DNA of 63,607 nt, counting the filler, from Octopus bimaculoides (lineage: Eukaryota): assembly GCF_001194135.2 (NCBI RefSeq). It is 5 parts of 5 records of this genome, joined end to end, with 100 filler letters (N's around TTAATTAATTAA, not from the genome) between each part and the next. Parts side by side here need not be neighbours in the genome. Positions count along the whole stretch, not along the records: positions 1 to 24,964 come from NC_068985.1; 4 more parts are not named here. One strand, 5' to 3'. Positions within the stretch are counted from its first letter, which is position 1, and each line of letters starts with the position of its first letter. A program made the position numbers and the translations under genes. Below, in pieces: positions 1-23,700 of the stretch. The notes under the pieces are model-generated. The model saw only the letters and a list, made by a program, of their open reading frames with translations. It was not told the origin of the DNA and made no database searches.

Positions 1-6
1 TTTCAG

Positions 7-174
7 ATAACTCATATGATTATGATATCGCTCTAATTAAAATAGAGCCAAATAGGAAGGGAAATGGAATTGTTTTCAATGATTATGTACAACCAGCCTG
101 TTTGCCAGACAAGAATGCAACCTATTTTGAAGGTGAAAGATGTCATATTTCTGGATGGGGAAACACAGGAAAAG
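7..174 (+). CDS. Trypsin-family (S1A) serine protease, neurotrypsin-like; internal exon with catalytic Asp
   Basis: tttcAG acceptor at 5-6; translates (D)NSYDYDIALIKIEPNRKGNGIVFNDYVQPACLPDKNATYFEGERCHISGWGNTGK; GT donor at 175, phase 1. DIAL motif and GWG present. Confidence 0.9.
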
Positions 175-821
175 GTAGTATTATCATTATAATATATTTA
201 AACATTACAGACTTATTATTTCAGGTTCTTGGTCAGCATTGAGTAGCCTAAAACCAAACAGCAGTAGGTTTCATAGGCCACTGACAAACTTCTTGAGCAG
301 CAGCAGTTTGAATGCTGCCAATTTGGTATGACTGACTGGACATTCAGCCTGTTTTGGCACACACAGAACTATAAAAATGCAAATAGGAAAAGTGAAGAAA
401 GAGGGAGAGAGAGACAGGGAGAGAGAGATAGAGAGACAGATAGACAGACATTACAATTTATCAATTGAACACAACTGACATAAAGACTGTCCATCTCCTC
501 ACATAATAAGAAATATGCCCCCCCCCCATTCACATACACATAAACAGAAAGAGAGAGAGAGAGAGGGGGGGAGGTAAAGAATGAATGTCTGATGCTAAAT
601 AGGTTAGCACTGAATAAGCAATGCCAAAACATCTCATACCTGTTGGACAGAACTATGATACAGAGGTTGCCAATGCTTAAAAACAACCCCAAATCTCAGT
701 GCTATGCATAATCACTCTTTCAGTCTGGCCTGAGATAACATAGTATACAACTTCTTCTTCAGGCACACCCCTTCATCATATCCAGCAGTGTTAGCATACC
801 CCATGAGAAAAATATAGTTAA

Positions 822-985
822 GGTGGTGCAGACATGGCTGTGTGGTAAGAAGCCTGCTTTCCAACCTCATGGTTCTGGGTTTAGTCACACTGGGCGGCAT
901 CTTGGCAAGTGTCTTCTAGTATTACCTTGGGTTGACTAAAGCCTTGAGTGGATTTGGTAGAAGGTAACTGAAAGAAGCCTGTCAC
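822..985 (+). mobile_element. tRNA-headed SINE (family recurring at ~3990-4130 +, 6610-6746 -, 8130-8290 -, 9775-9920 -, 31560-31700 +)
   Basis: Shared core TGTGTGGTAAGAAGCTTGCTTCCCAACCACATGGTTCTGGGTTCAGTCCCAC with A/B-box-like motifs. Confidence 0.75.
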
Positions 986-1826
986 GTGTGTGTGTGTGTG
1001 TGTATGTCTTTGCATTTGTGTTTGTTCCACCACCACCACCACCACCACTTGACAACCACATTCAATAAAGTAAGTACCAGTTCAGTATTAGGGTTGATGT
1101 TATCAACTGTCTCCTTTCTTTAAAATTGCTGGCCGTGTACCAAAATTTGAAACAATTATATTATTATATTTAAGGAGTTCAGAACCTGCTCTGGTTAACA
1201 TTACCTTTCATCTTTCAGGAATCAATAAAATAAATACCAGCAGATAAGGACAGTGATAATGCATGCTGCAGAAATCCATGATCGAGACACTGGCTAGCAA
1301 AAATCAGCTGACAGTGATGTAACCACTGATGTGGATGCTGTCTACATCAATTTCTTCTTTGCTTTGCTCTATTGTTGAATTTGCTTATATCAAAGAATTT
1401 GGAATGCATGGTGAAACAAACAGAAAAGATTCATGGCTTCTTAATAATGGGCTTTGAAAACCCTTTATTGATCAGTTTATTGTTGATGTCACCAGTTTGT
1501 TTATTGCTAGATGTATTTAGTTCTTGTTTATTGAAAATTTCATAATTGCAAATAAAATGTTACAGAAGGAAGAGAGTGCTAGGCTAAATGATTTTCAGTA
1601 CTTAGTTTACTACATTCTGAGCTTAAATCCCTTCAGTATCAACTTTACTTTTAATCCTTCTGGCATCTGTAAAATGAACATTTGCAATATGCAGAGGCTG
1701 AATCAGTCAGGTATATCCATTACTTTGTAAATATTGTCCGTGTGCATATATTAAATCATTTATATTTATGTTTACTTTATGATTACTTTGTTGTGTCTTT
1801 ACAAAGTATACGTCTTTTATCAACAG

Positions 1827-1997
1827 CATATCCATCAATTCTTAAGGCAGCTACTGTTCCATTAATTAAAGCAAAACTATGTAAATCATTGTACAAGAAC
1901 AGTATTACTCCACGTATGATATGTGCAGGCTACATAGAAGGCGGTCCTGATAGCTGCCAAGGAGATAGCGGTGGTCCTCTGGTCTGTAATAAAGATG
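1827..1997 (+). CDS. Serine protease exon with catalytic Ser (GDSGGP)
   Basis: AG at 1825-1826, GTAAGT at 1998; (A)[56 protein letters not shown]; DSCQG indicates an Asp189 trypsin-type pocket; phase 1-1. Confidence 0.95.
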
Positions 1998-2196
1998 GTA
2001 AGTTACACTTGGTCGGTTTAAAATTTTTGTTAACCATACATATGCCTATGCATACATGTTCACTTCTGTTTTCCAAGTAGATAAAGTAATGTGAGTTTTG
2101 TTCACTGGTTATAAATTTGCATCTTCCAACATGGTGCCAAAATTTGAAACCAATATTTATGTGATCTATATTTTTAATTCCTAATTCTTTTCACAG

Positions 2197-2324
2197 GAGT
2201 CTATACACTCACTGGAGTGACCTCTTGGGGAAATGGTTGTGGCCAGCCGAGAAATCCTGGAGTTTATTCCAATGTCCAAGAACTCCAACCTTGGATTGAG
2301 TTCATAATGAAAAAATATTCTTGA
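2197..2324 (+). CDS. Serine protease terminal exon
   Basis: cacAG at 2195-2196; (G)VYTLTGVTSWGNGCGQPRNPGVYSNVQELQPWIEFIMKKYS*. The short GWGNTGKAYP junction recalls neurotrypsin (PRSS12) GWGDTGRAYS, but orthology is not established. Confidence 0.93.
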
Positions 2325-2700: not shown

Positions 2701-2787
2701 TTATTTTTTGTTAAAAAATGACATCAAGGATGACTGCTTCTTCTGTCCTTTGTCAGGAACACTTGTTTTCGAGGCAGGTTTCTTGAG
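2701..2787 (-). CDS. POLD3: POLD3 terminal exon with PCNA-interacting PIP box
   Basis: LKKPASKTSVPDKGQKKQSSLMSFFNKK*; matches Q-x-x-L-x-x-F-F at the extreme C-terminus. Confidence 0.95.
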   Translation of the reverse strand, partial: LKKPASKTSVPDKGQKKQSSLMSFFNKK

Positions 2788-5700
2788 CTAAAAATAAAAA
2801 TAAATAACAGTATACATATGGAGGTAAAAACAAAACATAAACAACTTGAGGTCAATTTTGACGTTCATCCTTTCAGAATGATAAAAAAAAGATACCAATG
2901 CAAAGTGGTGGAACTGTAAGAATGGACGCCTTGTGATATTTGTTCTGACTCTTTGCATTCCAAGTTCAAATCTCACCCAGGTGGTAGACTTAACTCATCA
3001 CCCAATTTAACACAATCGACTGACATGTTAGGTGCCTTTGGATTGGATTACCTGTGACCAGTCCACTGCAGGATGAAGGTCTCAGCATGTTCTCTCCACC
3101 GACCACAGTCTGATGTGGAAGCTGTGAATTTGAACTTGAGATCATACTGGTTTGCGGAGATTACTGTGCCACTCCGGCTTGACATGGCTTGGTTTGAAGA
3201 TACACTCCTCCTTCCTGCTAGGCGTGGAGGTCTTCTTGTGCCATTTCTTATCTTTCAGTCAAGAAAGAAAGCTTTCCCTCATCATCATCTGTCCATGCTG
3301 ACCAGGGCTGGCAAGCTGGAAGGCTGCACCAGACTCCAGTCTGATTTGGCATGGTTTCTGCAGCTGGATGCCCTTCCTAATACCAACCACTCCAAGAGTG
3401 TAATGGATGCTTTTACACGCCACCGGCACAGATGCCATTTGCATGACACCAGTATCTGCCATGACTGCAATTTTACTTGGCTTGATGAGTCTTCTTCTCA
3501 AGCACAGCATAACGCCAAAGGTCTTGGTCATTTGTCATAAAACAAAAAATAAAACCCTGCTTTTTTAAGCAGAGATACATTAGGTAATGTCACCATGTCA
3601 TCTTCATAAGGCAGACTTAAGATAACAGCTACAATGTCTTTTATGGTAAAGTCTGCTTTATTAGAGTTGACCTGATACAATAAACTGAATTATTTCAAAC
3701 CATTTTTTTTTTAACAATTTAAGCAAAAGTTAGGGAATCTGAACTTGCCTCAAACAAATAGAAGTTGTTTATAGATCTTTAGAGAAACTTTAGTACTACT
3801 ACATACAGTTTGTTCATTTTATGTCCATTTTTCCATGTTAGTATGGACTAGACAGGAACTAATTTGAGACAGGGTTTTGCAGCTGGATGCTGTTCCTGTC
3901 ATCAACGTTCACCAGTTTTTCAAGTAAGTGATTTTTTTTCATATTCCACACATCTTTAGAAGCTTAAGGCAACAAGAAACTTAAGCATCATTGGTGCAGA
4001 TATGACTGTGAGGTAAGAAGCTTGCAGTTCAACCACATGGTTCTGGGTTCAGTCCCACTGTATGGCATCTTGCACAAGTGTCTTCTACTTTAGCCTTGGT
4101 AGATGGAAACTGAAAGAAGCCATTCATAGATGTGTGTGTCCCCACCAATCACTTGATAACTGGTGTTGGTGTGTTTATGTCCTTATAATGTAACAGTTCA
4201 GCCAAAGAGATGGAGAGAATAAGTATCAGGCTTAAAAACAAAAAAATAAGTACTTTGGTTGATTCCTTTGACTAAAAAATCTTAAAGGCAGCGCCCTAGC
4301 ATGGCTGCGATCTAATGACTGAAATAAGCAAAGGATAAATCAAAAGATTGTATAATTGGCCACAGGATGTCAATATTTATGCTGATTCACACATACACAC
4401 AATGGGCTCCCTTCACTTAGCATTTACAAAAACTCACTCACAATGATCTGGGACTACAGTAAAAGACACTTGCCCAAGGCACCACATAATTCAATTTAAA
4501 TATTTGTATTAACAAATGTATATAAAGACATGGGATTTCCCCAAGGAGGCAGAAAACTTAATTGGGAAGAGATAAGATTTGTAGTATCATGTTAAGTAAA
4601 ATCAAACATAAAAATTTTGCAATGAAAACCCATGGTAATTTTAAATTTATGATATAACTGCTGTTAGAAGCAGCATTTAAATTACAGAAATTGATACTGA
4701 ACTAAAGAAATAAAACACCTTAAGTACTCCAATGATGAATTAACATAAATTAACCCTTTCGTTACTATATTTCTGACCAAAATACACCCATCATGAGTTT
4801 CAATTAAATTCTAAAATAATCATGAATTTAGACTAGTCTCATTAAACACCTGTAACTTTTTTATTTATCAACATATTAATGTGATATTTGGAACATAATT
4901 AAAGAAAGAGTTCTTAATCAATTCTATTGCATAATTTTTGTCTCTAAGTTCTCCACGTACGGGGGGGGGGTACTGCTAGTGTCTCTCACATGTAAATATT
5001 GGTTCAGCTTCACGAATCGTACTCATTCATAATACTGGAAATATATTCATCGCCAAAAGGTTCCTGATCGCTCCAGTAATTTGTTATTCTGGGTAACTGT
5101 CTAATACCCATAATAATATTTATGGCAAAAAATGCCCGTATTTCATCTACAGTTGCAGGAAACCGCAAGCTATCTTTTTTTCCGGCTTGTTTACATTCTG
5201 CGTAACGGTTTGTTTCCGCAGTAATCATTTCAAACAAGCATGAAAAAGAAGTCTAAAGGTTTCGCTTCCTGAGAAAGACTATGGATAGACCCTGTCTCCT
5301 CAGAAAAATTGTTAAAAAAAATATTTTCTAAATCTTTACTCCATTCTGGTGTAAAATCATCCTCGCTGTCGCCGTCGCTGCTTTCAGAATCGCAACTTTC
5401 AGTTTCGGATACAGAAATATCCAATTCATTATTGTTCACCACGTGCTTTTGTAGCTCATTCATTCTTTTCTTCGATACCTCCATATCTTCTGTTGAAAAA
5501 CCTTCAAATCTTCCAAAATTCACTGAGTTCAAATATCACGCCAAACAATGTCGGATACAATAACTCAACTGTTTGCAAAGTGAAATCAGGTGTTTTAACG
5601 AATGTACTAATGAGATTTGGGTTCAAATATACATTTAAATAACAATGGGTACTCTCAGCCGGCTACGGCCGAGTTAGTAACGAAAGGGTTAAGACCAACT

Positions 5701-8700
5701 TTATAAGTTGTAAAGTTAAGACAACACTCACCTGAGCAGCTGACAGTACAACAGGTGCAGCTGTTGTTGGTGGTTTAGAGTTTTTTTCTGTTTCCTCGTC
5801 AGAGACATCAGTTGAGTCACTGACCATAACTTTCTTTGTAACTGAAACAATAAATTAAATTAAATTTATTAATAGTAATTCTCTATTTAATTTGAAAATC
5901 TTTAGCAACATGATCATAAAAATGCATTGCTAAGCTTACATTTTGCTGAATTCGATCTGAGTTTCTTCATGTTTCTAACAACAACAATGAATTTACATTT
6001 TTGCAAAGTAAGATGAGCTAAGAGATAAAGATTTGTTTATTACAATGAAATGGCCAATGAACAAAATTATTAAACTACCGGCTTGTGGATTAAGAGATGA
6101 TATTAGATGCAGGTATTTAATTCCAACTTTTGTCAGGGCGTTTAATTCCGTATACTGTGTATCTCAGTTCATTTTGCTCCAGTAAAAGACATTCAGCTTT
6201 ATTATGAATATTATCATGGGTAAGTTAGTGATCTAAAAAAGTGTGACAGAGAAATTTTACCTATCAACTTGCTAAAAATAGCAACCAAATAGTGATCAAG
6301 TAGTCAGATTGTATGGTGAAAATTTAAAGTGAGCTTTAGAAGAGATTTGGTCAAATATTTAAGATATGTTACAGGTGTTATCAAATACTAATGAAGTTTG
6401 AGATACCTGTTATGCCAAGGCATTGTACTGCCAGCAGAACATAAAATCAGTCGTGAAGATTATTATTAAACAAGATGAACAAACATTCTCATCAAAATCA
6501 TGCTTGCAGGAACTTCTTGTACTGGCATTGGTTGGACAAATCTAGTACAACATAACACTTTTCTCAATACTGTAACATCTCATCAGTGAAGTCCAAAATC
6601 CTGAAATCTGACCAGACTCAATGCACTACTATAGCCCGAGGCTATAGTAAAGGTCCAAGAGTACAGTAGAAGCCCAAGATGCCATGCAATGGAATTGAAC
6701 CTGGAACCATGTGGTTGGGAAGCAAGCTTATTACCACACAGCCATGCTGCAATTTTCACTCAGCCTTTGCCATCCTTCTTCACAGTTATATTTCGTGCAT
6801 ACATTAACTGACACCATTAATGTCCAGTCACACTCACATGTCAAAATCACTCTATCTTTCACGCAAATCAACACTGCAGAGCCAAGAGAATAAAAATAAA
6901 AATATTTATGAGGCAGAAACATGTTATAAGCTGCCCCATGATCACCATCACCTATTTTACTGAAATAATTTATGTCATGAAATAACATTTCAATAAAATA
7001 GTGAAGGTTACTGCTCAATTTCTGACAGTAAATGGTTGTCATATTTAATGTAAATCCACATTTTTTATATCAGCAGTTACATAGTACATATATACAGAAA
7101 AATCACATTTTTCAAAGTAAGAAAAACAAAAAAATACAGACCCATAAAACCTTCATCATCTATAAAAGTCTTATTTTTCTGTCTTTTTATCCGTTTCCTT
7201 CGTTTTCCATCTTTATTAACAACAACTCTAGATTCTGTTTCTCTTACTGCTGTTTCTTCAGTGTTTTGCTCACAGCCATTTTCTACAGCAGCTGAACTTC
7301 CTTCCATTGTGTCATCCTTAATATCAGCATCAGTGGGCATCATCTCTGGACTGGGTGGACTTGGAAGTGGTTCCTCTGATTCCATTTCTAAGAACAAATA
7401 CATTTGAGATTTTAATTCAAAATGAGCAGATATGAATGAAATAAGTGCAATGATTAGAGAAATGCCAGAGAAGATTCAGTTGCTAAACTATTAATGCAGA
7501 AAACATTGATTCTATTTTTGCCATTAGCAAGGTAAATATAATTACTAGATGCTTTCATCTATTTCTCTTAACCTTCATCTACAGACAGATATTCAGCTAT
7601 TTACATGTCTTCTTGCCTTCATTTAATAGTGAGTAGTTCTATAAACTAATATATTATATGCTACCCTTAATGACTGCTTCATATAGTATCATCATCATCT
7701 TTTTGACATCCACTTTTCCATGCTTGCATAGGTTGGACAGAGTTTATTGAGGTCGATTTTCTACAGCTGGATTGCCCTTCCTGTTGCCAACCCATACATG
7801 TTTCCATACAAAGTGATATTTTCTCACGATCAGACATGTTTCCACAGAATATTGGAAATGAATGACATTCATTTACAATAATCAGGTGTTTTAACGAATG
7901 CACTAATGAGATTTGGGTTCAAATATACATTTAAATAACAATGGGTACTCTCGGCCAGCTACGGCCGGGTTAGTAACGAAAGGGTTAAGACCAACTTTAT
8001 AAGTTGTAAAGTTAAGACAACACTCACCTGAGCAGCTGACAGTACAACAGGTGCAGCTGTTGTTGGTGGTTTAGAGTTTTTTTCTGTTTCCTCGTCACAT
8101 AAACGTAAGTACACAGACACACACACTTACAATGGGCTTCTTTCAGTTGCTATCTACCAAATCAGCTCACAAGACTTTGGTTTGCCAAGGGCGATAGGAG
8201 AAGACACCCAATGTATAACAAAGCAGGACTGAACCTGAAACCAATGTGGTTGGAAAACAAACTCCTTAACCACACAGCTATGACTGCACCTAAATGTGTA
8301 CCTGGATTAAATCAAGCTGACAGCAACCATCATGTTGGGTATGCAGTGAGGAGAGAGTCTGGTTTTTGGTAAATATAGTGACCAAGAGATGATAAGGTCT
8401 GTGTGTGTGTGAGTGTGAGAGAGAGAGAGACACTACAGAATGATGCGTCAAATGAGCAGAGTGAGGAATTCAAAGGAGTAGAGAGACGATTGGTAATTCA
8501 ATAGTTACAAGTTGGCATAAGTTCAAAGTTAAACTGTTGTCATTTTTGTCTTTGTTTCTTTAAACACATTTAATAATGTAATTTTCAAAAGCATCAAGTT
8601 TTAAAATGAGATGTGTATATGTATATTATCATCATCATCATCATCGTTCAACGTCCGCTTTCCATGCTAGCATGGGTTGGACGATTTGACTGAGGACTGG

Positions 8701-11700
8701 TGAAACCGGATGGCGACACCAGCCTCCAATCTGATTTGGCAGAGTTTCTACAGCTGGATGCCCTTCCTAACGCCAACCACTCAGAGAGTGTAGTAGGTAC
8801 TTTTACGTGTCACCCGCGAGGGATGTTTTCAATAATAGCTTTGGGTTAACCAAAGCATTGTGAATGGATTTAATAGATGGAAACTGAAAGAATCCCATCA
8901 AATATGTAAATATACATGTTTACATATGCATATGTGCATTTGTGTGGACTTGTCTTGACAGCATGTGATTGAAAATGAGAATCACCATCATCAAAAAAGT
9001 CATGCTGTTTGTTTCCTGTCTTCTATACCAAAATACTACCCTATTTGGAAAGAAGTGAGTGTCAGTGACAGGAAAGGCATCCAGCCACAGAAAATCTGCT
9101 GCAACAAATTCCATTTGACTCATGCAAGTATGGAAAAGAAGATGATTATGATATATATACCATACACATATGTCATGACAGAGAGAGAGAGAGAGAGAGA
9201 GATTCAGCTTTTTATCTTTCAATTAGAAACAAAATATAAACTTTACCTTCCTCACTACTGCTATTTGGGACTATGCGGTGCCGCTTCTTTTTTTGGAACA
9301 TATCTTCTACATGAGGGAAAAAATATATAATTATATTCTTGTTTTGACAGAAATGCTTTAAATATATAAATGTTTTTAAAAGCTCAGTTTTATAAATACT
9401 AGTGTTCAGTTCTATTTTCAAGGAATTGCATGAAGGAGAGCTAAATCTTGGACCCGTATACAAGTAAGTAGTTCTATAAACTAATATATTATATGGTACC
9501 CCAAATGACTGCTGCATATAGTATCATCGTCATCCTTTTAACATCCACTTTTCCATGCTTGCATAAGTTGGACAGAGTTTATTGCGGTAGATTTTCTACA
9601 GCTAGATTGCCCTTCCTGTTGTCAACCCATACATGTTTCCAAGCGAAGCAATATTTCCTCACGACCAGACATGTTTTCGCAGAATATTGGAAATGAATGA
9701 CATTCATTTACAGTAATCACTTAATATTAAGACAAGGAGACACAAATATACACACTCACATAAACATATGTACACACACACAATGGGATTTTTTCAGTTG
9801 CTGTCTACCAAATCAATTTACAAGGGCTACAGGGGAAGACACCCAATGTATCACACAGCAGGACTGAACCTGAAACCAATGTGGTTGGGAAGCAAACTCC
9901 TTAACCACACAACTATGCCTGCACCTAAATGTCTACCCGGAATAAATCAAGCTGACAGTAACAATCATTCCCCAAATTACACTCTCGATTAAAAACAAGA
10001 ATTAAGAAAAACAAAATACATTAATTTTAGTGTCCACCTATCTTTATAGCTTATAGCAAGTGATCCCTATTACTCTTTTACTTGTTTCAGTCATTTGACT
10101 GGGGCCATGCTGGAGCACCGCCTTTAGTCGAGCAAATTAACCCCAAGACTTATTCTTTGTAAGCCTAGTACTTATTCTATCGGTCTCTTTTGCCGAAACG
10201 CAAAGTTACGGGGACGTAAACACACCAGCATCGGTTGTCAAGCGATGTCGTGGGGGACAAACACAGACTCACAAACACACACACATTATATACATATAGA
10301 TATATACGATGGGCTTCTTTCAGTTTCCGTCTATCAAATCCAGTGAGTGTCAGTGACAGGAAAGGCATCCAGCCACAGAAAATCTGCCGCAACAAAATCC
10401 ATTTTACTTATGCAAGTATGGAAAAGAAGATGTTAAAATGCTGATGATGTTGGTGATGATATAATGATCACATTCTCTTTTCATACTGGCACAGGTTGGA
10501 CAGATTTGCTGGGGAAGTGGGCATAAAAATTATGATATATATGAGGAGCTTACTTTCAAAACCGGTATAAGTGCATATTTGGTCAATTTCATGATAACCA
10601 TTAAAACACAATCTGCAAGCTGCTGGTTTCACACATGTGGAATTTTTTTCAGTTAAACTGGGATAGATGCCATATAAGACAGCAGATGAATCTTAGTCTT
10701 CCAATCAAAATCAGATATATTCAAGTTGTTGTTTTAAACAATTACTCAAAAGTCATTCCGATGCATGTACCTGGTAAGCCCTTCATGTACCATACATATA
10801 CGTCATGACAAAGAGAGAGATTCAGCTTTTTATCTTTCAATTAGAAACAAAATATAAACTATACCTTCGTCACTACTGATATTTCGGACAATGCGGCGCC
10901 GCTTCTTTTCTTGGAACATATCATCTTCTAGATGAGGGAAAAAATTTAATTAATACACATTCTCAAGTTCATTGCATATACTTAAATAAAATCTGAAAAA
11001 TTCCAATTCCTGCACAAGTTATGAATGAAACAACTACATAAAATAAGCAGATTAAAATAGTTTACCTGAATCAGATTCTTGAAGAGATTTTTTGACTTCA
11101 TTCCTATTTAAGAGAAAATAAGAACATTCTTTAAAACAATACTTGCTAATTAATTTAACTTTTAGGTTTAACTATGTTTTCAGATTTGATATTTCACTAA
11201 GGGAATGTAGTAAAATACAGGTAGAGATTTTTAGAATCATTTAGTGTGAGATTGCAGGTTGAAATCAAAAGTGCATTTATATACACTTTCTATTTATTTC
11301 ACTTTTTCTTATATAACGATATAGTATATGCAGGAATTCAGTTTATAAACTAATGTTTATCATAAAGTTCACCTTGTATGTATAATCAATTTCATCATCA
11401 TCAACTAGTGTCTATTTTCCATGCTGCATGAGTTAGACAGTTTGACTGGAACTGGTAAGCTGCACCAAGCTCCTCTCTGTTTCTACGGCTGGATGTCCTT
11501 TCTAACACCAAGCACTCCGTAGAGTGTACTGGGTACCTTTAACACGTCACTGGCACAAGTGCTTTACACATGCCACTGACATTGACCATAGCTACAATTT
11601 CACTTAGTTTGATGTGTCATCTCAAGCACAGCAAGAAGCTTCTGTGTGTGTGTGTGTGTGTTTTTATGTCTCCTTATTTTGACATCATTTCCAATATTCT

Positions 11701-14700
11701 GCAAAAAACATGTCTGGCCATGGGAAAATAATACTTTGCTTGGAAATGGGTATGGGTTGGTGAGAGGCAAGGCATCAGGCCATAGAGAATCTGCCTTAAT
11801 AAACACTATTCTACCAGAAGCATGGAAAAGTGGGTGTTATAGTAGTGATGGCGATAGTGATGATGATGACAACAATGATGATGATGAAGATGATGATGAA
11901 GAAGATGATGATGACCTCAACTGCTTTTCATCAACTAAGTCTACTTTCCTGCTTTTGATATTCACTACTCTAACTAAACCATGTTGGTCCAATACGTAAA
12001 TATAAAACTTACTGCTTATTATTAGAAGTATTTCTAGATGGTTCTGTATTTTCTGATTTGATCTCAATGCTCTCCGATTTTCCTGTAAGAAAATGGAAAT
12101 TATGATATAATAAGGTAGCTTGTATCAAAGCAATGTGAATCTACAAAATACCTAATCAAACTCCATCCTGCAAATCCAAACTTCCTAACTTCAAAAACGA
12201 AGGATTTGTGGTAAGTTTACAAATACATAACTACATCCATGAGATACAAACCCATAACATATGAAATCAAAACACTGGTACTTTATCCATCAGTAACTAC
12301 ACCACTATCAAATTCTGATACGGTTAATTTTTTTATTCTGGACTACAGGAATGTTTATAAACTGTAAATAATACTTGTATTAATCGTAAAACTCCATAAG
12401 GCCATCAGGTTTCCATAGTATCAAGTATACAAGAGATAAAAATCTCCTTGTATTTGTAAATTTCCCAGAGAAGTCTGGTACTTATTAATACTAGGTTGAG
12501 GAAAAAGTTTGTATGCTGTGTTAAAATAATGATTTTTTTATGCAAGAATTCTTTCAAAATCAACACCAACTATTCTTCAAAATAAAGACCATCATTTTCC
12601 ACGACCTTCTTCCAACGATCTGCAAGCTTTCGGATTTGTCAATGTACCAATCCTTTGGCTTTGAAGGTGTACCTTTATCAGATGGGTAGTCATGATGGGT
12701 ATATTGAGCTTCGTATATTTGTATCCCAGTGTCACTTTGGTGTCATGTGCAGCTCTCTCACTCAATAATAATAATAATGGTTTCAAATTTTGCCACACAG
12801 GCAGCAATTTTGGGGAAAAGGATGAGTCAATTACATCAACCCCAGTGTTCAACTGGTACTTATTTTATTGACCTCGAAATGATGAAAGGTAAAGTCAACT
12901 TCAGCAGAATTTGAACTCAGAACATAGCAACAAGCGTAATATCGTTAAGCATTTTGTTCAGCGTGCTGAAGATTTTGCCAGCTTGCATTGAGAAGAATTC
13001 TTTGGGGTTTGAATAATTCACTTCTGGAAACATGGGTGCTTCATTCATCATCCCTAAACAAACCTTATTCACGGGCCTTTTGAGCAGGATGGGCTACTCG
13101 ACCTGAAGAAAATTCTAACTGAGCCCCATCTGCAAGGTTATGTGCTATTTATCTTGATATGAGATCGGTACATGGACAGGATGCTGAATGCACTTTTGCT
13201 GAAGCCATGAAGCCGAACAAACAAGATGCAGAAAAGACATGAAAATTAAAATTCAAACTCGTAAAATCTTAAGTACCAAATTAGTGAATTGGACATTAAA
13301 CTATGTAGGTAGAATGTTTTTTTTTTTTTTTATTGTGTCCATACAGCTTTATGTTCATTTAGCAGTGTCTGTTTGGCATCTTGGCTTCAGCTTTTTGTCC
13401 TTTGGCAAAAGTGCATTCAGCACCCTGTCCATGCACAATGAGATCACCATGTCACACACATATGGTTGTGATGAATGTACCTGGTGTACCCTTATCAGAC
13501 GGAAAGTCATGATGGATATATTGGGCTCCGTATATTTGTACCCCAGTGTCACTTTGATGACATACATTGCTCCCTCACATAATAATAATAATAATAATAA
13601 TAATAATATACATACCTGCAGAAGAAAAGAAAGAGAGCACACCAGTTGGTTTCTTTGAAACCTGAAAATAGTAATTAACAATAACTCGACCATTTCATAA
13701 AATCTTTTAATACAAACTTCAACAAAGCAACAAATCATTTACACACTTCTAAGAAATGCAACAACATGATACATAACAGATTTATTCTCATTAAGGAACC
13801 AACTATTTTCAATCTACTACTATGCAACCTATGCAAACAAATTCCTCTGCTCGAGCTCAGTAGAAAAAATGTAAAATTTCATTAGCTTTCAATTTTTTTA
13901 CTGAACTGAAATTGTATCATTGGTATTCTAAAAGATTGAACTATCATTAAAATTAAATTCATAGTATTTTTCAAAGAGGTGTTATTTCATTAATCAACAA
14001 TATTTAGTTCAACTCCTACCAACCTTTTTAGCTGCCTGTTCCTTCTTCGGTTCAGAATTATTACTACTCTGATCTGTAGATGCTTGTTTGGAAATATTAT
14101 TCTTATTGCATTGAGCAAACATTCCAGCAATTACTGATTTTGTAACTGAATTCTTGGAATTGTTAGTGCTGCTGTTATTGTTGTTGTTGTTATTATTATT
14201 GTTGTCTCTATTTGTTTTAATGGACGTTTCATTAGATGTCTATTAGAAAAAAAATCGATATAGAGTTACAAAAATATTCATTCATGTATGACAAGCTCAA
14301 AAATTTAACCCTTTCATTACAAAAATGTCTTGAAACTGCTTTCAGCCATGTGTTAGTAAACCACCCAGATTTACCTATTTATATTTAAATCAAAATATCA
14401 ATGCAAATTGTAAATTATAACCTGATTTCACAAGGTTAACTAACATCTGTTGAACACCATCACCATTTGAATTTGTTACAACATAAATTTTATATTCTCC
14501 AAATATTTAGGCTCTCTCTAGCAAGAATAATTCCAAATTGGAATGAGAACTTGAAAAAAATTTCTTTTCCATATTTCTCAAAAAGAAAATAAATATAATG
14601 ATGCATATTAGGAAGCTATCAAGATTACCAATTATTGGAGCACCAATGAACCCTGCTGTGGCACCTATTTTTCCAACATGAAGACCTGAATGCAGTTTTA

Positions 14701-17700
14701 AAACAGTATCAATATTTTCTTATACATGAAGGTAGCAAGCTGGCAGGATCATTAGCATGCTGGGCAAAATGCTTAGCAGCATTTCATCCAACTTTATGTT
14801 CTGAGTTCAAATTCCACCAAGATGGATAAAATAAGTACCAGTTGAGCAATGGGGACAATCCAATCAACTTACCTCATCATCATCATCGTTTAATGTCCGT
14901 TTTCCATGCTAGCATGGGTTGGACGGTTTGACTGAGGTCTGGAGAGCCAGCGGCTGGACCAGGCTCCAATCTGATCTGGCAATGTTTCAACAGCTGGATG
15001 CCCTTCCTAACACCAATTGCTGTGAGAGTGCAGTGGGTACTTTTTACGTGCCACTGGCACGGAAGCCAGTCAGGTGGGCCTGGCATCAGCCACGTTCAGA
15101 TGGTGCTTTTATGTGCCACTGGCATGGGAACCAGTCAGAGGGCACTGGCATTGACCACGTTAGGATGGTATTTTTTACATGCCGCTGGTACGAGAGCCAG
15201 TCAGGACACACTGGCATCGACCACATTCGGATGGTGCTTTTATTGTGCCACCCTCCTCTGAAACTGCTGGCCTTGTACTAAAATTTGAAATCAGTATTTT
15301 CAGATACATGATGCCAGAAGTACACCAGCATGAAGTGAGGGGGGTGGGGGAGAAAATTATTTGAATTAAAATTTCTCTTGAACACTGTACACAGGATGTT
15401 TATAACTGTTTGCTAATCAGTAAAGAGGTGGTGGGGGTAGAAATCCTGGATAAGTTTCTGACAATGCCGAATAAATCTATAAAATGGGTTTTGTAAGGCA
15501 GACACTGCAATGGGTTTCAGCAGAAAGGAAATTTGTCTATGATTTCATACAAGAATCAGAGACAAACTCATTTTCATCCATGTCCACTCACCCCGTTTTG
15601 TGAACAGCTGTGGTTATATATTTCCAACAAGCTAATTACTAATTCATTACATCTCCAATGGTGAGAGTGACATAACTAATATGAAATAAAATACCACAAG
15701 GTATTTTTGTTTTGAATACACCCATTTTATTAAACATTTTATCTATGGAATCACATAGCTGAGAAGCAAACTTTTTAATCACACAGCCATACCTGCACCT
15801 TAAACCGACCTTGAGTCATTTCATTTGGGAAACCAAACATGCAAAGATCTAACCTAACTGCTTTTTCCCAAACTCCTTTTGCTCTATATTGATCAGTGCA
15901 GCAGCAAAGACATAACTGATATATGCCAGCTAACAAGTTCAGAATCCACAATACTTCTGTACAAATCCTGCAGAAATTAGCTGAGATTTTACCTGTAAAT
16001 TGATAAAATTTGAACTAAATAAGCTCAAATGGAAAAAGCAACTTAAGTACAGGATTTCAGATTGACTGATTTCAGTTTCTATGTTGCATCTACAATAGAA
16101 CTAAGAAGAGACACTCTAAAAGCAAACCATGTTTCCTCATCTCAGAGACTGAGCATCCTGCTAGAAAGCACCACTAATCCCATAAGACCTATGAATGAGA
16201 CAAGCAATTTATAGAATATTTACAACCTGGACAGAAAGTGTGGAAAAGACAATAAAAAAATATACAAATTGATTTACAAACCTTTAAAGGAGAATTAGGT
16301 TGAGCATCCTCAGTTTTAACTTTCCTCTCTATCTTTTGTGCTGCATCATACTTAACTGCACTATACCTGCAGACAATACAAAAACATATAACAACTTGTC
16401 AATAAAACTTTCTTATATACCTCTGCTATTACCAATCACACTATTCACATCTTTTTACTTCTGAGTCACCACAGTCGGAGTCAGCATGTATTCAAGAACA
16501 TTAATCACCAAAATAGGTCGGGGGGGCTGCATCTCACTTGTATTTTATTTTTAACTTCGTTTCTCTGGCTGTATGCTCTTCTTAATGCCAACCATTTTCC
16601 AAAATACAAGAGGTGATTTTTCTCTCATGGCACCAGTGCTACAGACATGCCAAGACCCCAACAAGTTTAAAGGGTTCTCTCACCCTTAGAGTTTACAGTA
16701 TGTAGTGGGTATATTTTTCTTGGTATCAGCAATAGAGAAGTAGCCATGTCTTTGACATGGCTAAAGGAACAGGGCCAAACTTTACATCGTGTAGGTGTAT
16801 TTTTACCCACTCCGATGTTTACACACAGCCAGTTATATGTTGCTATGAGTAGAGCAACGGACTCCAGTAATTTGAAAATTAGTGTCGACCAAACATAAAA
16901 TATCATCGACAAAGATGTTTTGTAATCATATTGACATTACCAAAAGGAATATGTTTCATAATTTAAATAAGGAAATTTGTGAACTTTGAATGTATAAGAG
17001 TATAAACAAGTGTAAAATAGCATAAACAACTAAAATAAAAGTATATCTAAATAACATTTTTACTTAATACTTTTTATGTGGTGGTCGAAGGAAGCTCTGG
17101 CTTTCATTAGGAGTGGTCCACATAACCATTCATGATACAAAGGTTGGGAGCCTATTTCAGTTCAGGAGTGAATCATCATCATATGTCACTCAGTCGCAAA
17201 CATGTCATATAGCGGCAATAGAATGCTGTATCACCAACAATAATGTGATTTCTCTTAGACATCCCCCAGTAATCTATCAAGTCCATTTACACATTTCTCA
17301 ATACATACTGCTTTTATGACTTCCCTCCCTCATTTTATGCCTCCGTCATAGATGAGTAGATCTGTAATAATGTAAACAAATGTGAACAGAAAAATCTCAA
17401 CTAGGATTGAAACCAGGTCAGGCCAATCCTTTTCTGTCTGTCCATTTGTTCACATTTGTCCAAGTGCACTCAATTACATATCACAGCAACAGCTAAAAGC
17501 TTGGACTGTTTATAAAGGTATATCTAATGTCCACTTGAAAGTATTAAACACACACTGTTTAGTTCATCAATAATTAAATAGTGGAAATTATCTTCTCTGA
17601 AATAATTTACAGCTGAGATGTACATTAGTCTGCAACTCTGAACAAAGTTAAAAGTAAATCAATGCATCAAAAACCACACTTTTCTCAAGAACAATATAAT

Positions 17701-20700
17701 ATAAACTCCGAATAATATTTGACATTTAATATAAGAAAAGAACGATATTCATTCAAGTAAAGAATAGTTAGTTTAACATCAAACCTGGATGATTCAATCT
17801 CATTTTCTTTCATTTCCTGGTAATCTGTAATATATAGCACACTGGAATCCTAAAAAAAAAGCAAGTAATATCTTTATTATAATTTCAAGATATCTTTCAA
17901 CAATTATAGCATATTAGGTTATAAATTGCACATACATGTACAGTATCAATTTTGAATAGTTAATGGTTCAGTTAAAGGCAAAAAAGCAGCATCCATAAAA
18001 CTTTCCTGAGCCTCCAACATTCATGGGAGGAAGGGAAGAAGTTATCCGCTGACCAGAAACCTAGATGCTTACAACAAAATAGACTCTGCTAAAGACACCC
18101 AAACTGACTCATAGTTGAAGTCTCTCCAAGAAGAGAATCACTCACTCAGATTTCCAATACAATTCACAAAGATTTGGTCAACCCAATATCTAGGAAAAGG
18201 ACACATTACCCAAGGCACTGTACAGTGGGAATCATGTCAAAAACACAGTTTGTGATGCAAACTTCTAAGCCACACAGCCATGATAGTGCCCAGCAGTATA
18301 GAAGGTAGTGATGACAAACGTGTATTTTGAAACAAATAACTGTAAGGTGTAAGCAGCCAAACAATCAATTTTATGGATCCCAAGGCAAGAAGTATGGATC
18401 TTTTTTAAAACGGGGGCCACATTTTTCATTAACGAAACACTTTGAAACTTGGAACACTGGTAGAATGTGTCATATAAAACATCTTTTTCTCTTAGTCTTC
18501 TTTAAAAAAAAAGAAATCCATAAGTTATTCCATGTGAAAGTTGTCGTATTTCTGTAATTTCAACCAATCACTGACATCCATTCAGCCGATATACATTAAG
18601 TGCCAACTACATAAACAAACGATTCTGAAACAATTAACCCTAACCCTAACCCTAAAGGTTAGGGTTAGGGTTAAAGCAAATTTAAAATGAAAAAAGCAAA
18701 TAAAACAAAGGTATGGAGATTAAATATGCTTTACATCGCTTAATCAGCCAAAGGAGTAAATATAAACAACTGAATACTTGTCAGTGATTGGTTGAAATTA
18801 TCGAAATAAGACAATTTTTTACATGAAATAAATTCGAATACAAAAATATTTTTCTGTTCTATAACACAAAATAGATAAGTATACGAAGTTTGAAAGTCTT
18901 TCGGTACCAAAAACACTACGTAAAACATTAATGAAAAATGTGGCCCCCGTTTTAAAATAGATCCAGAAGTATTATTTATGTTCTACGTTTCTATGATGGC
19001 AGAGTTTAATCTTTTAGATACCAACCCACCTGAGCTGCTTTTTGTTCTATAATACAAACTTGTTTTAAAGTAATCTAAATTAAAAGCTGCCATCAAAATT
19101 TCATGTTGATTTATGTTCCAAACATTAGTTTAATAATGACAGTTATTTTACCAAATTCCTTATTTTCAAAATTTATTGAAACAAAGAGAAAGAATTTCAA
19201 CATAAATATGATAACAAAAAGGTTAAATCAATCCATAAATATACTAATTCAAATTAATGTATATCTCCTAGTTTGGTACAGATTTTCCAGCAAGGCGGAA
19301 TGAACCAACTGCAATGAATATTCTCTCCAGCCATCCATGTCACTATTTCTGAGAGGGTCATGGGAGTGAACCCTCAGGCATCTCCTCCATAAGGTCCTAT
19401 CAGAAACAAGTGTCTGGCTGGATTCCCAAGCATGCTCAACTAAGACTATGGATATTATCCAACTGTCTCAATCTTGGTCTTCTCCTAGGTTTTGTTGATT
19501 CTTCTTGAAGAATTTGTCTTACAATTGTTTCCTGTGACATTCTAATCACATGATCACAGTACTGGAGCTGTGACTTCTAACAGGGAGAAGTAGCAGCTCA
19601 ACATAGAGGGACTCCCTTATCAAATATAAGTATATTACAGCTAGCCACTGCTTGGCATTTTCATTTAAAATTTGTAGACTCATAATATCCTTCAGGTGAA
19701 TAATTGATTTATCTTTATTAAATGTTTCATATACAGTCATGTGTCATAAAATATATGAACAATTCCTTGATTGACAAACTTATAAAATAAACTGACCTTT
19801 AATTTGGACTTTTGAACACTATATATATGACAACTGTGTAATTGTTGAAGAGAGCTTTTAACAGTTTCCAGTTTTTCTTCAGGAACCACACTACAAAAGA
19901 CCACCTAAAAGCAAAAAAAATATCTGTTACATTTGACCACCTCAATGATGTAGATAAGTCATTATTACAGTTAATCATTTGAAACAGTTGAATAATTGCT
20001 AAATTACTTTCTTTAAACATTTCCATTGTATGGATGAAAACTCATACCATTTTAAACATACAGATAATCCTTAATTATGAAAAAACAAATACAGGGTATG
20101 TCAGTATTTTGAGGTCATTTGTAGGAACGAAGAAAAAGAAGTATAGCACACCAGAGAAAAACTTTAATTAAAAGAAAATTAGTACAAATAATTTTGAGAG
20201 TCCTTACAACACTTCTATTCAATAGATCCATCATTAGCCTTAATGACGGCTTCAATTCAAGGTCTGAAGCATTGACATGCACAAATCAGATGGTCTTTAT
20301 CAATTTCAGACATAGTCTTTCTTATAGCACACTCAAGAGATAGAATGGTGTTATTAGTGTTGATTGACCCTTCTTTTGACAACGCCCCATACTTAATAGT
20401 CCAGTGGATCGGATGAGCTAGGAAGCCATGTGTCTGGGGTAACATGATCGTAGAAATTGGCGTGCATTTAAGCTTGGGTTGTTTTAGCCTTGTGAGATGG
20501 TGCAAAATCTTGTTGAAAGATGTAAGGTCTTCTGTTGCTTATACTGTCTATCCAGGGCCACACAACCTTCTCCAATATATCTTATGTAGGCAGCAGCATT
20601 GATTCTTAAGCCCTGTGAAAAAAGTGGGGAGGCATGACATGACCTTCACTGCTAACGACTCCCAGGACCATCACAGTTGCTGCAAATTTGGTATGTATTA

Positions 20701-23700
20701 CAACAGGAACCTCACTTGGATATCTGCATAACCATCTGTCATTCCTTGGGTTTACCTTTCGGTTTTCTCGTTAGAGAAAAATCAAAGTGTTCCAGTTTCT
20801 TGACGTTTCAATTTGTAGAGCAAGTGTTTTCCACAGATCAAACAATTATCTTTCATTGTACTTAATATGAACTGACCTCTTTGTAATGGATACCTTCATA
20901 CACAACTCTTCTGATGGTGCATTCTGAAACCTTGAAATCCTTTGCAAGAGCTCTAATTGACTGTCCAAGGTTGTGTTGAAATTTTCCTGTATTTTCTGCA
21001 CAAATCCTTGGATTCTTATGGTATTAGAACCCTTTACATGTATTTTGCGTTTAGCTGCTAATGTTGGATCCCCATCAGCAACTTTCAGGTCTTCTATAAT
21101 TTTGGCAATGATGGATCAGGCAACTTTCAAGCAAGCAAACAATTTCTGTATCTTTATGCTGAGCTTTTATGGTGATGATTACAACATGCCTTTTCATTTT
21201 CATTTTCTGAAAAAGAAATTAAGAAAAGAACTAGTTATAAGAAAGAGCTAAAGTGACGACCTCCAAATACTGATGCACCCTGTATATTTTACATGTGTAA
21301 TAAGACGTCACTTCATTTTAACTCTGTTTGCTTTTACAGTTTTAATCAACCATAGTAGTTGTTCTATTCAATAAATATGATACTCAAAGTCTCTTAAAAT
21401 CTTAAAACCATAAGCATTTAAATTTAATAAAACAATTCTGAATACAATATATGTACGTAGTATATATATAAATATATATAAATATATATAAATATATANN
21501 NNNNNNNNTAAAAGAAGAAAAAGAAAATGGAGATTGGGAAAGTAATAATTGTTTATTATTAACAGCAAATTAATCACCTTCACTTACAGCTGTTTCAATT
21601 TAATACTCAGTAAATAATAAGCAAATATCAAATTTATATTTATATGACCTGAGCATAATAACTTCAGAGGGGAAAAACATACCAGTATTTCCTTGAATGA
21701 AACCATCCCTTCATGAGGTTAAATCTGAAAGATTGATTTACATTTCTGTTTGATGTTTTGCTTTCAATCTGAGTATTGATCTAAACTGGTTTAATTCCAA
21801 ACCCTAACATTTTACTCATCCTTTACATTCTTTTATGCAAGTCAACAAAGCAATGTTGAAAATAACTGTGAGATGTATATTGCTGTGTCATTACAACATA
21901 CATCAGTTGACTTTTTTTATTTCTAATATGATACTTGCTGAAGAAAATCATTACTAGCCTCTTAGACCTAGGGATTACTCACCCATTTAATTCTGAAACA
22001 CCAATTTAGCTAAAAATCAAAACAGCAAGAATTATACAGTGCTTTTTCAAGGATAAATGTTAGATTTCCTTTGACAAGACATATTTCATACCCTAACAAA
22101 ACCTAACAACACTCAATCTTGATCAGACAATATCAATATACATAAAAGTGTGGAAGAGAGAAAGGGTCTACCTCAAGTAGACCTAACAGAGAGATCAGCT
22201 ATTGAAGTTGAGAGCTTTGATGAAGGAAAAACAGGAAAAGCAGATAAAACATCAGGGATAGTAATTAGTGACAGAAAATAAACCAGTGAAATGAGATAAG
22301 CATTAGTCACTTGTCTTGTCAACCAGGTAGTATACATGGAGGAGTCATGCTCAATAAATAGTGTTGCAATATTATCATCAACTGGTACGTGGACAAATGC
22401 AAAACTCCAGAAAGAAGCAGCAACAAAAACATCAAACTGATGAGCCAAATAATGGAAGTAACAGAAACTAATTAGGTGGAGAAATATAGATGCAGATTGG
22501 ATTTTTGCTTGGGAATGTCATAAACATCATACAATTTTGTTTCCTATGCCCTATAAATCTGAGACATTGAGACATTGTAAAAACCAATATTTATCTAATA
22601 TTTACATAGTTTTCAATTAACAGATCTGCTCTTGTGAACAACAAAACAAATTACTCCTTACTTTGGTTCCATCCTTCCTTTTATCCGTTATTCCTGCCAC
22701 AAAATAGGTGACATGAAGGCAATCAGAATCCTTTTCACTTCTCTGTTGCTTCACAAAGTTGAATAACATCCTAAGAAAAGATGCCAAGATCATTAATGAT
22801 TTTGTTACAAGAAAAATAATAAACTATAAATTCACATTTATATTACCACAATTATTTTTTGTCTCCTGTTGATGTTTTAGACAAATTAATCTATCTGGTA
22901 TTGTATCAGAACTGATTGTAGTTTAAGTTAGCAGGTGTTTGTGACAAAAGTGGATCGTAACTTGTTAGGAAGTGACGCTATAAAACAATGGTTCTTAACC
23001 ATTTTTTGTAGTTCTCCCCGCCCCCACATCCTTTTAAGTAGTTGTGAGACACAAATAAGATAATAATTTATTTTCAAACACACAAACACTGATAGAACAG
23101 CAAAGACAGGATAAAATATCCATACAAAATGAAAAAATATGTCAGCAACCAGCCATGACACTTTATACATTGCAAGTTGATTTCTCTGTGCTTGATGAAA
23201 TCTCATTTTATTTTAATAACTGTTACTAGTTTTATCATGCATAATATAATTACTATTATAAGTAAAATTTAGTATGTCTTATGGCTGGTTGCCAACATAT
23301 ATTTCTGTTTTGTATGGATATTTTATCCTGTCTCTGCTGTTCTATCAGCATTAATGCATTTGAAAATAAATTATTACCCTATTTATATCTCACAATACAC
23401 ATTTCAGTGCTTCTAAAGCAAACATTGGTTTGTTTACATTCATTATTTTAAGTAGCTGTTATGCCTAACACCCACCTAAGTGGCAAAGGAGGTATCATGA
23501 CTAAACTAATTATGGATGATAATTTATGAAATTTACTCTAAAAGTGGATTGTGTAAGCTTTTAACAGTGAAATGATAAAAAAATTAATGAGGACAAAAGT
23601 TGTAAATTTACTTTATACATTGCAAGTTAATGACTTCTCAGTACCTGACATCATCATTATCATCATCATCGTTTAACGTCCGCTTTCCATGCTAGCATGG

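What the first reader, a model, noticed from the sequence alone, without database searches (positions are those of the whole stretch)
9247..10927. Tandemly duplicated symmetric exon in POLD3: two diverged KKRR/acidic-serine cassettes
Seen: a ~1.6-kb intragenic duplication produced two phase 1-1 exons, EDDMFQEKKRRRIVRNISSDE (63 nt) and EDMFQKKKRHRIVPNSSSEE (60 nt). Both keep AG/GT sites, pyrimidine tracts and open frames, and the only indel is 3 nt, while the flanking introns have gained different SINEs. Established: basic clusters of this type are NLS-like, S-x-x-E/D motifs are CK2-type sites, and I recall a single such segment in vertebrate p66. Inference: the gene may make mutually exclusive or additive isoforms of a core replication subunit. 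This is the best candidate for undescribed biology here.
Basis: partly seen in the sequence, partly recalled or inferred. Interest (0 to 1): 0.75.

Follow-up and report, generated by a model that had tools for sequence, protein, structure and literature searches.

The report
Duplicated nuclear-import exon in octopus POLD3
Octopus species carry two tandem copies of the small POLD3 exon that encodes the protein's nuclear-import signal, and public gene models already show versions with one or both copies, so this is a real but ordinary exon duplication.

Summary
The window is Octopus bimaculoides chromosome CM046605.1 (100% identity), and the gene on the minus strand is POLD3 (Pfam CDC27, 190 bits). 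Exon A (10927-10865, 63 nt) and exon B (9306-9247, 60 nt) are phase 1-1 paralogues inside homologous intron blocks.

Both copies, with AG/GT and open frames, are also present in the O. sinensis and O. vulgaris assemblies. Argonauta hians has one copy (72 nt). So do cuttlefish, other molluscs and vertebrates. The duplication is therefore specific to the Octopus lineage and is not an assembly artefact.

The exon is the counterpart of the experimentally shown human p66 nuclear localisation signal, KKRRRIKL.

The isoforms are already in public annotation. O. bimaculoides XP_014777503.1 has A+B, matching the window exon by exon. XP_014777504.1 has A only. O. sinensis shows the same pair, and the O. 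vulgaris model has A+B. No B-only model was retrieved. The pattern is a constitutive A plus a cassette B, not mutually exclusive splicing.

Substitution rates show no detectable constraint on either copy, but the power is very low. A functional consequence is untested. I rate this a new member of a known kind, of low to moderate interest.

The parts
11066..11103 (-). POLD3 exon upstream of the pair (xNEVKKSLQESDS). It ends in phase 1 and donates the G of the first codon of exon A.
   Evidence: matches residues 278-289 of XP_014777503.1 (P0234).
10342..10952 (-). Duplicated block P1: 26 nt of upstream intron, exon A and about 520 nt of downstream intron with an old SINE fragment. It carries a 270-nt segment (about 10811-10543) that is absent from P2.
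   Evidence: Self-BLAST; alignments.
10865..10927 (-). Exon A, 63 nt, phase 1-1, EDDMFQEKKRRRIVRNISSDE. It keeps the canonical KKRRRI core and is present in every Octopus POLD3 model retrieved.
   Evidence: P0234 residues 290-310.
9043..9333 (-). Duplicated block P2: 26 nt upstream, exon B and downstream intron with the same old SINE fragment, partly deleted.
9247..9306 (-). Exon B, 60 nt, phase 1-1, EDMFQKKKRHRIVPNSSSEE. It is a cassette exon: included in isoform X1 and skipped in X2.
   Evidence: (P0234 residues 311-330; absent from P0161).
9334..9475 (-). Block 'u' directly upstream of exon B. In O. sinensis and O. vulgaris a paralogous copy also lies upstream of exon A, so it belonged to the original duplicated unit. 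O. bimaculoides has lost that upstream copy.
9463..9986 (-). Q1, a SINE-like element (tRNA-like head, GAT-rich tail) in the A-B intron, present at this place in all three Octopus species.
7603..9043 (-). A 1.44-kb segment of the B-D intron present only in O. bimaculoides. It holds a SINE (8814-8622), Q2 (8333-7628, about 91% identical to Q1) and the exon-fragment copy.
10367..10449 (-). Arm a1: a SINE fragment downstream of exon A, complementary to b1 and b2.
   Evidence: inverted repeats I1, I2; duplex energies -89.5 and -80.6 kcal/mol.
9525..9607 (-). Arm b1 (inside Q1), lying between exons A and B. It can pair with a1 or with a2; pairing with a2 would loop out exon B.
9079..9144 (-). Arm a2: the paralogue of a1, downstream of exon B.
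7142..7387 (-). The next POLD3 exon (EMESEEPLPSPP...KRRKRIKRQKNKTFIDDEGFM), with the second basic cluster and the start of the DPIM-like motif.
5732..5841 (-). POLD3 exon VTKKVMVSDSTDVSDEETEKNSKPPTTAAPVVLSAAQ.
2704..2787 (-). Last coding exon, with the PIP box QSSLMSFF.

Best explanation
An ancestor of O. bimaculoides, O. sinensis and O. vulgaris tandemly duplicated part of a POLD3 intron region, after the split from the Argonauta lineage. The duplicated piece ran from about 150 nt upstream of one symmetric (phase 1-1) exon to at least about 600 nt downstream of it. That exon encodes the conserved nuclear-import cassette of DNA polymerase delta subunit 3: a basic KKRRRI core followed by an acidic serine patch, within the disordered linker. 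Both copies remain usable exons. The upstream copy A keeps the canonical core and is in every model. The downstream copy B carries an R-to-H change in the core and behaves as an in-frame cassette exon. The gene therefore yields a protein with one cassette (A) or with two in tandem (A+B). Shown here: the duplication, its lineage distribution, the intactness of both copies in three species, and the existence of public A+B and A-only models. Inferred: that these models reflect real transcripts. Also inferred: that the second cassette acts as an extra, probably weaker and largely redundant, import or CK2-type phosphorylation module, most likely with little effect on fitness.
For: Gene identity: Pfam CDC27 at 190 bits against a cut-off of 24.5, and homologues named DNA polymerase delta subunit 3. 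The window is 100% identical to O. bimaculoides CM046605.1. Residues 26-477 of XP_014777503.1 map exactly onto window exons, including A and B. Duplication: homologous blocks around both exons. In O. sinensis and O. vulgaris the shared flank extends about 150-175 nt upstream. Both copies sit at syntenic places in O. sinensis (L004) and O. vulgaris (L005), with AG/GT and open frames. Argonauta hians has a single 72-nt phase 1-1 exon in its genome. All other POLD3 proteins retrieved have one strict cassette. The duplication predates the species split: both B copies share CAC/ATA/AGC against CGC/ATT/ATC in A, flank sites group the B copies together, and A shares no state that is specific to O. 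bimaculoides B. Isoforms: A+B in P0234 (O. bimaculoides X1), P0236 (O. sinensis X1) and P0163 (O. vulgaris); A only in P0161 (O. bimaculoides X2) and P0162 (O. sinensis X3). Function of the motif: the human KKRRRIKL is a functional NLS.
Against: I could not inspect RNA-seq reads, so the isoforms rest on computational RefSeq/GenBank models. Neither copy shows purifying selection. A versus B gives pN 0.10 and pS 0.10. B between species gives pN 0.079 and pS 0.10. A between species has 3 changes, all non-synonymous. By comparison, pN/pS is 0.38 for the three exons that follow B (window 7387-7142, 5841-5732, 2787-2704). Counts are tiny, but this fits a dispensable segment. Intactness of B is expected by chance in 45-75% of cases. 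O. sinensis isoform X2 was not retrieved, so a B-only form is not strictly excluded.
Confidence: 0.75

Rival explanations
1. B inclusion is a regulated switch. Inverted SINE fragments form competing long-range RNA duplexes. Pairing of a1 with b1 stays inside the A-B intron. Pairing of b1 with a2 loops out exon B. The outcome would set the one-cassette to two-cassette ratio by tissue or stage, tuning nuclear import of polymerase delta.
For: Arms of 66-83 nt at 74-78% complementarity flank exon B. Duplex energies are -89.5 (a1:b1) and -69.4 (b1:a2) kcal/mol, against about -25 for shuffles. The arms are kept in O. sinensis and O. vulgaris, at -60/-47 and -64/-47 kcal/mol. This geometry, one duplicated arm competing for one partner, is what Ivanov and Pervouchine propose arises from tandem exon duplication (PMC6071210). 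Drosophila Pol32 is needed for nuclear localisation of Pol delta in early embryos (PMC6542543).
Against: Inverted SINE pairs are common in SINE-rich introns and need not affect splicing. The arms are simply repeat copies carried along by the duplication. There are no expression data. No compensatory changes were tested. The exon shows no sign of constraint.
Confidence: 0.12
2. Exon B is effectively a pseudo-exon. The A+B models are products of the annotation pipeline or reflect rare splicing noise, and only the A-only protein matters.
For: B evolves at about the intron rate: 5 of 60 bases plus one indel between O. bimaculoides and O. sinensis, against 5.5-7.3% in introns. The core R-to-H change weakens the basic cluster. 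Intactness is expected by chance. A-only models exist in two species.
Against: A+B models were produced for three species, and A+B is listed as isoform X1 in two RefSeq annotations. Splice signals are as good as those of A, and in O. bimaculoides the B donor GTAAAG is closer to consensus than GTATAG. Exon A also evolves fast, so fast evolution does not single out B.
Confidence: 0.12
3. The two exons are mutually exclusive alternatives, one of the first reader's two options.
For: Tandem duplicated exons are a classic source of mutually exclusive pairs (PMC9013439 and PMC6071210). Potential competing RNA pairings exist.
Against: Models with both exons exist in all three species, and no B-only model was retrieved. 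Including both keeps the frame (63 + 60 nt). The intron between them is 1558 nt, so there is no steric block.
Confidence: 0.04
4. The second unit is an assembly or haplotype artefact.
For: An unplaced O. sinensis contig (VCDQ01000993.1) breaks inside the A-B intron and gave a truncated gene model.
Against: The copies differ by about 10% and carry different transposon insertions. Both copies and the junction between the units are present in assemblies of three species. A and B each have their own orthologues.
Confidence: 0.01

Closest known systems
Tandem exon duplication giving alternative exons (Kondrashov and Koonin, and Letunic et al., from my own knowledge; Ivanov and Pervouchine, PMC9013439 and PMC6071210)
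   Same: Adjacent homologous exons of the same phase and near-equal length, homologous flanking intron, lineage-specific origin, and alternative use of one copy.
   Different: The best-known cases are mutually exclusive substitutions in folded domains. Here both copies can be included, and the segment is a short motif in a disordered linker, so the result is a change in motif copy number rather than a domain variant.
Human POLD3/p66 nuclear localisation signal 319-KKRRRIKL-326 (Pohler et al. 2005, PMC1187890)
   Same: Same position in the protein, downstream of the FF-containing (Rev1-interacting-region-like) motif and upstream of the second basic cluster and the DNA polymerase interaction motif (DPIM). 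Same core, KKRRRI in exon A. Followed by an acidic serine stretch.
   Different: Human and all other retrieved POLD3 proteins have one strict copy, and Octopus has two. The B core is KKRHRI. NLS activity of the octopus cassettes is untested.
Single-copy orthologous exon in Argonauta hians POLD3 (GAB1602924.1, locus L003:18391-18462)
   Same: Phase 1-1 exon between the same neighbouring exons, encoding DDDTCQKKKRRRLAPVVFESSSEE. The neighbouring trypsin/SRCR gene is in the same position.
   Different: One copy of 72 nt, with compact introns of about 290 and 540 nt. Its downstream intron is not alignable with the Octopus flank beyond the splice site.

Membership tests
POLD3 / Cdc27 / Pol32 (third subunit of DNA polymerase delta) | Match to Pfam PF09507 (CDC27) above the gathering score | tested here: met
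   190.2 bits against a cut-off of 24.5, covering profile positions 1-443 of 443.
POLD3 / Cdc27 / Pol32 (third subunit of DNA polymerase delta) | C-terminal PCNA-binding PIP box Qxx[ILM]xxFF | tested here: met
   QSSLMSFF is encoded at window 2787-2704.
POLD3 / Cdc27 / Pol32 (third subunit of DNA polymerase delta) | Conserved N-terminal domain (binds POLD2) and a DPIM-like motif | tested here: met
   VTYRWLSITLQVHVNLAKQ is 79-84% identical to vertebrate POLD3. KTFIDDEGFMVTKKV aligns with vertebrate K(T/M)(Y/F)xDxEGCxVTEKV. Binding itself is not testable here.
Tandem exon duplication | Adjacent exons of one gene with significant sequence similarity, equal phase and similar length | tested here: met
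   54 of 60 bases identical, 63 and 60 nt, both phase 1-1.
Tandem exon duplication | Homology extends into flanking introns, and an outgroup has a single copy | tested here: met
   Flank homology. Argonauta has one copy.
Mutually exclusive exon pair | Exactly one of the two exons in every mature transcript | tested here: not met
   Public models P0234, P0236 and P0163 contain both exons. This was tested on gene models, not on reads.
Mutually exclusive exon pair | A mechanism that forbids joint inclusion: frame incompatibility, a too-short intron, or competing RNA structure | tested here: inconclusive
   Joint inclusion is in frame and the intron is 1558 nt, so the first two mechanisms are absent. 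Competing pairings a1:b1 and b1:a2 are possible but are untested.
Classical monopartite NLS | Basic core fitting K-(K/R)-X-(K/R) | tested here: met
   A has KKRRR and B has KKKRHR. The orthologous human motif was shown to be functional.
Classical monopartite NLS | Drives nuclear import | not testable with these tools
   Needs a reporter assay.
CK2-type phosphorylation site | S/T-x-x-D/E pattern | tested here: met
   ISSDEE in A and SSSEEE in B; the consensus is as quoted in PMC11595029. Phosphorylation itself is not testable here.

The most novel reading that the evidence does not exclude
Octopus uses regulated inclusion of the second NLS cassette to tune nuclear import or CK2-dependent regulation of polymerase delta in particular tissues or in early embryos. 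Inclusion would be controlled by competing double-stranded RNA formed between inverted SINE copies that the duplication itself created, and that RNA would also be a natural substrate for the very active cephalopod ADAR editing system.
Probability: 0.08. Interest if true: 0.5.

Novelty: new member of a known kind. Interest (0 to 1): 0.25.

Why it matters
This is a clean, datable example of a tandem exon duplication that changes the copy number of a short linear motif (an NLS plus an acidic serine patch) in a core replication protein. It differs from the usual case, which swaps a variant of a folded domain. It gives a simple system for asking whether NLS dosage in POLD3 matters and whether duplicated intronic repeats set up alternative splicing. 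The isoforms are already in public annotation and neither copy shows detectable constraint, so the likely biological impact is small.

Tried and rejected
1. The first two word-indexed protein searches, using spliced window peptides, found no Octopus full-length POLD3. They even missed Argonauta. I nearly concluded that no models existed. A profile query then found them, so absence was an index limitation.

2. I briefly read a BLAST row as a diverged extra copy of exon 7387-7142 at the start of the O. sinensis contig. It was a hit to L002, which is stored in the same file as L001. I rejected that reading.

3. dN/dS for A and B rests on 1 synonymous and 3-6 non-synonymous differences per comparison. 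It has no power and I used it only as 'no detectable constraint'.

4. The 47 nt downstream of both exons differ at only 1 base, which suggested a conserved splicing element. This is within chance for the flank divergence, and the stretch is not conserved in Argonauta. I did not pursue it.

5. I considered a three-copy ancestor to explain why the intron before A is 138 nt in O. bimaculoides but about 1.75 kb in O. sinensis and O. vulgaris. No third exon copy exists in any locus. A roughly 1.6-kb deletion in O. bimaculoides is the simpler explanation.

6. Literature searches for POLD3 plus octopus, and POLD3 plus exon duplication, gave nothing relevant.

7. tRNA, Rfam and structure-prediction tools were not used. 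The segment is a short disordered motif in a eukaryotic gene.

Full report
**What is there.** Read on the minus strand, the window contains two short exons. Exon A is 10927-10865 (63 nt) and exon B is 9306-9247 (60 nt). Each is preceded by a T/C-rich tract and AG, and followed by GT.

The upstream exon (11103-11066) ends with one base of a codon. With that base the two exons translate to EDDMFQEKKRRRIVRNISSDE and EDMFQKKKRHRIVPNSSSEE. Both start and end in phase 1. They differ at 6 of 60 aligned bases, plus one GAT unit lost from a GATGAT repeat.

Similarity extends into the introns. 10952-10812 matches 9333-9194 at 90.9% (E=2e-48), and 10435-10342 matches 9148-9054 at 94.7%.

**Gene and species.**
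- The window is 100% identical over 22,764 bases to Octopus bimaculoides chromosome CM046605.1, the part of the window that the fetched locus spans.
- The minus-strand gene is POLD3. The encoded protein scores 190 bits on Pfam CDC27.
- Its relatives are named DNA polymerase delta subunit 3.
- It ends in the PIP box QSSLMSFF.
- Residues 26-477 of RefSeq XP_014777503.1 map exactly, exon by exon, onto the window. Residues 290-310 are exon A and residues 311-330 are exon B. Exon 1 lies outside the window.

**Distribution of the duplication.**
- O. sinensis (chromosome CM016863.1, L004) and O. vulgaris (OX597818.1, L005) each have both copies between the same neighbouring exons, with AG/GT and open frames.
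- In those two species the shared flank reaches about 150-175 nt upstream of each exon.
- O. bimaculoides has lost that stretch, and about 1.45 kb more, upstream of A. Its intron before A is 138 nt, against about 1.75 kb in the other two species.
- Argonauta hians, another octopod, has a single 72-nt phase 1-1 exon in its genome, encoding DDDTCQKKKRRRLAPVVFESSSEE.
- Cuttlefish, bivalves, gastropods, a brachiopod, a nemertean and vertebrates all have one strict KKRRRI cassette. Among the retrieved homologues of 300 residues or more, only the Octopus A+B proteins have two.
- Under a looser pattern, many POLD3 proteins have a degenerate basic plus SD/E stretch just upstream. 'Single' therefore holds only for the strict motif.

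**Timing of the duplication.** It predates the split of the three Octopus species. Each copy has its own orthologues. The B copies share CAC, ATA and AGC where A has CGC, ATT and ATC, and flank sites also group the B copies together. A shares none of the changes specific to O. bimaculoides B. A haplotype or assembly artefact is excluded.

| Species | Accession | Isoform | Length (aa) | Cassettes |
|---|---|---|---|---|
| O. bimaculoides | XP_014777503.1 | X1 | 477 | A+B |
| O. bimaculoides | XP_014777504.1 | X2 | 457 | A only |
| O. sinensis | XP_029636262.1 | X1 | 473 | A+B |
| O. sinensis | XP_036359163.1 | X3 | 452 | A only |
| O. sinensis | XP_036359164.1 | X4 | 440 | A+B, plus a retained intron |
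| O. vulgaris | CAI9722754.1 | named isoform X3 | 472 | A+B |

No B-only model was retrieved. The pattern is a constitutive A and an in-frame cassette B. Joint inclusion keeps the frame, and the intron between the two exons is 1558 nt, so nothing enforces exclusivity.

From general knowledge of the NCBI annotation pipeline, alternative variants are built from transcript evidence. I could not inspect the reads, so I treat the existence of these transcripts as inferred.

**What the cassette is.** It aligns with human p66 319-KKRRRIKL-326. Mutating KRR to NGG in that sequence abolished exclusive nuclear localisation of EGFP-p66 (PMC1187890; review PMC11595029).

Exon A keeps KKRRRI. All three B copies have KKRHRI, which is derived relative to Argonauta. 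Both cassettes end in serines followed by acidic residues, which fits the minimal CK2 pattern. Import activity and phosphorylation of the octopus cassettes are untested.

**Selection.** There is no detectable constraint on either copy.
- A versus B gives pN 0.10 and pS 0.10.
- B between O. bimaculoides and O. sinensis gives pN 0.079 and pS 0.10, plus the 3-nt indel.
- A between species has 3 differences, all non-synonymous.
- The three exons that follow B (window 7387-7142, 5841-5732, 2787-2704) give pN 0.041 and pS 0.108.
- Introns differ by 5.5-7.3%.

The counts are too small for a test. Intact splice sites and frame are expected by chance in 45-75% of copies at this divergence. This fits a redundant, weakly constrained motif.

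**Possible mechanism of B skipping (inference only).** The duplicated block carries an old SINE fragment downstream of each exon: a1 at 10449-10367 and a2 at 9144-9079. A SINE-like element in the opposite orientation lies between the exons, with arm b1 at 9607-9525.

Predicted duplexes are -89.5 kcal/mol (a1:b1) and -69.4 kcal/mol (b1:a2), against about -25 for shuffles. The arms are kept in the other two species. Pairing of b1 with a2 would loop out exon B.

This is the geometry proposed to arise from tandem exon duplication (PMC6071210). However, inverted repeats are common in such introns, so I give this reading low probability.

**Verdict.** This is a real, lineage-specific tandem duplication of the NLS exon of POLD3, with the second copy used as an optional exon. 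It is already represented in RefSeq, but I found no paper describing it. It is a new member of a well-known kind, of modest interest.

Noticed in passing
window 7880-8097 (minus strand): A 218-bp copy, 98% identical, of the last 70 nt of the POLD3 exon at 5841-5732 plus 148 nt of its downstream intron (source 5584-5801). It keeps the CAG|GTGAGT donor. It lies inside the O. bimaculoides-specific 1.44-kb segment of the B-D intron. O. sinensis and O. vulgaris have only the original. It could act as a cryptic donor or pseudo-exon.
   Followed up: partly
window 5013-5535 (minus strand): A piggyBac-type transposase fragment lies in the intron before the last POLD3 exon. An older UniProt model (A0A0L8GW45, P0164; Pfam PF13843) splices the exon at 5841-5732 onto this fragment. 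That gives a C-terminus without the PIP box.
   Followed up: partly
window 10928-11065, compared with L004:22182-23923 and L005:23758-25505: The intron before exon A is 138 nt in O. bimaculoides but about 1.75 kb in O. sinensis and O. vulgaris. The O. bimaculoides intron equals the first ~124 nt plus the last ~26 nt of the long one. The region where exon A's branch point would lie (not mapped here) therefore differs between species.
   Followed up: partly
L001 (O. sinensis VCDQ01000993.1) 1-2300: This unplaced contig, from the same assembly as chromosome CM016863.1, starts in a LINE fragment inside the A-B intron. It carries a second copy of the 3' half of POLD3, annotated as the truncated 'uncharacterized protein LOC115228952'. 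It is probably a redundant haplotype contig.
   Followed up: partly
window 1-2321 (plus strand): The last exons of a trypsin-like serine protease gene (GDSGGPL motif at about 1960-2000) lie here, convergent with POLD3. The same neighbour (SRCR/kringle/LDLa/trypsin) follows POLD3 in Argonauta, O. sinensis and O. vulgaris.
   Followed up: no
window 20609-21115 (minus) and 16671-16895 (plus); N run near 21480: Mariner/Tc1-like transposase open frames and a helicase-like, Helitron-type fragment lie in POLD3 introns, and there is a 10-N assembly gap. They were identified by eye from the translations only.
   Followed up: no
window 14150-14190 (minus strand): The POLD3 exon at 14239-14021 encodes a run of ten asparagines (NNNNNNNNNN). 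The run is shorter in O. sinensis and O. vulgaris (six) and in Argonauta, so this is a length-variable low-complexity tract.
   Followed up: no
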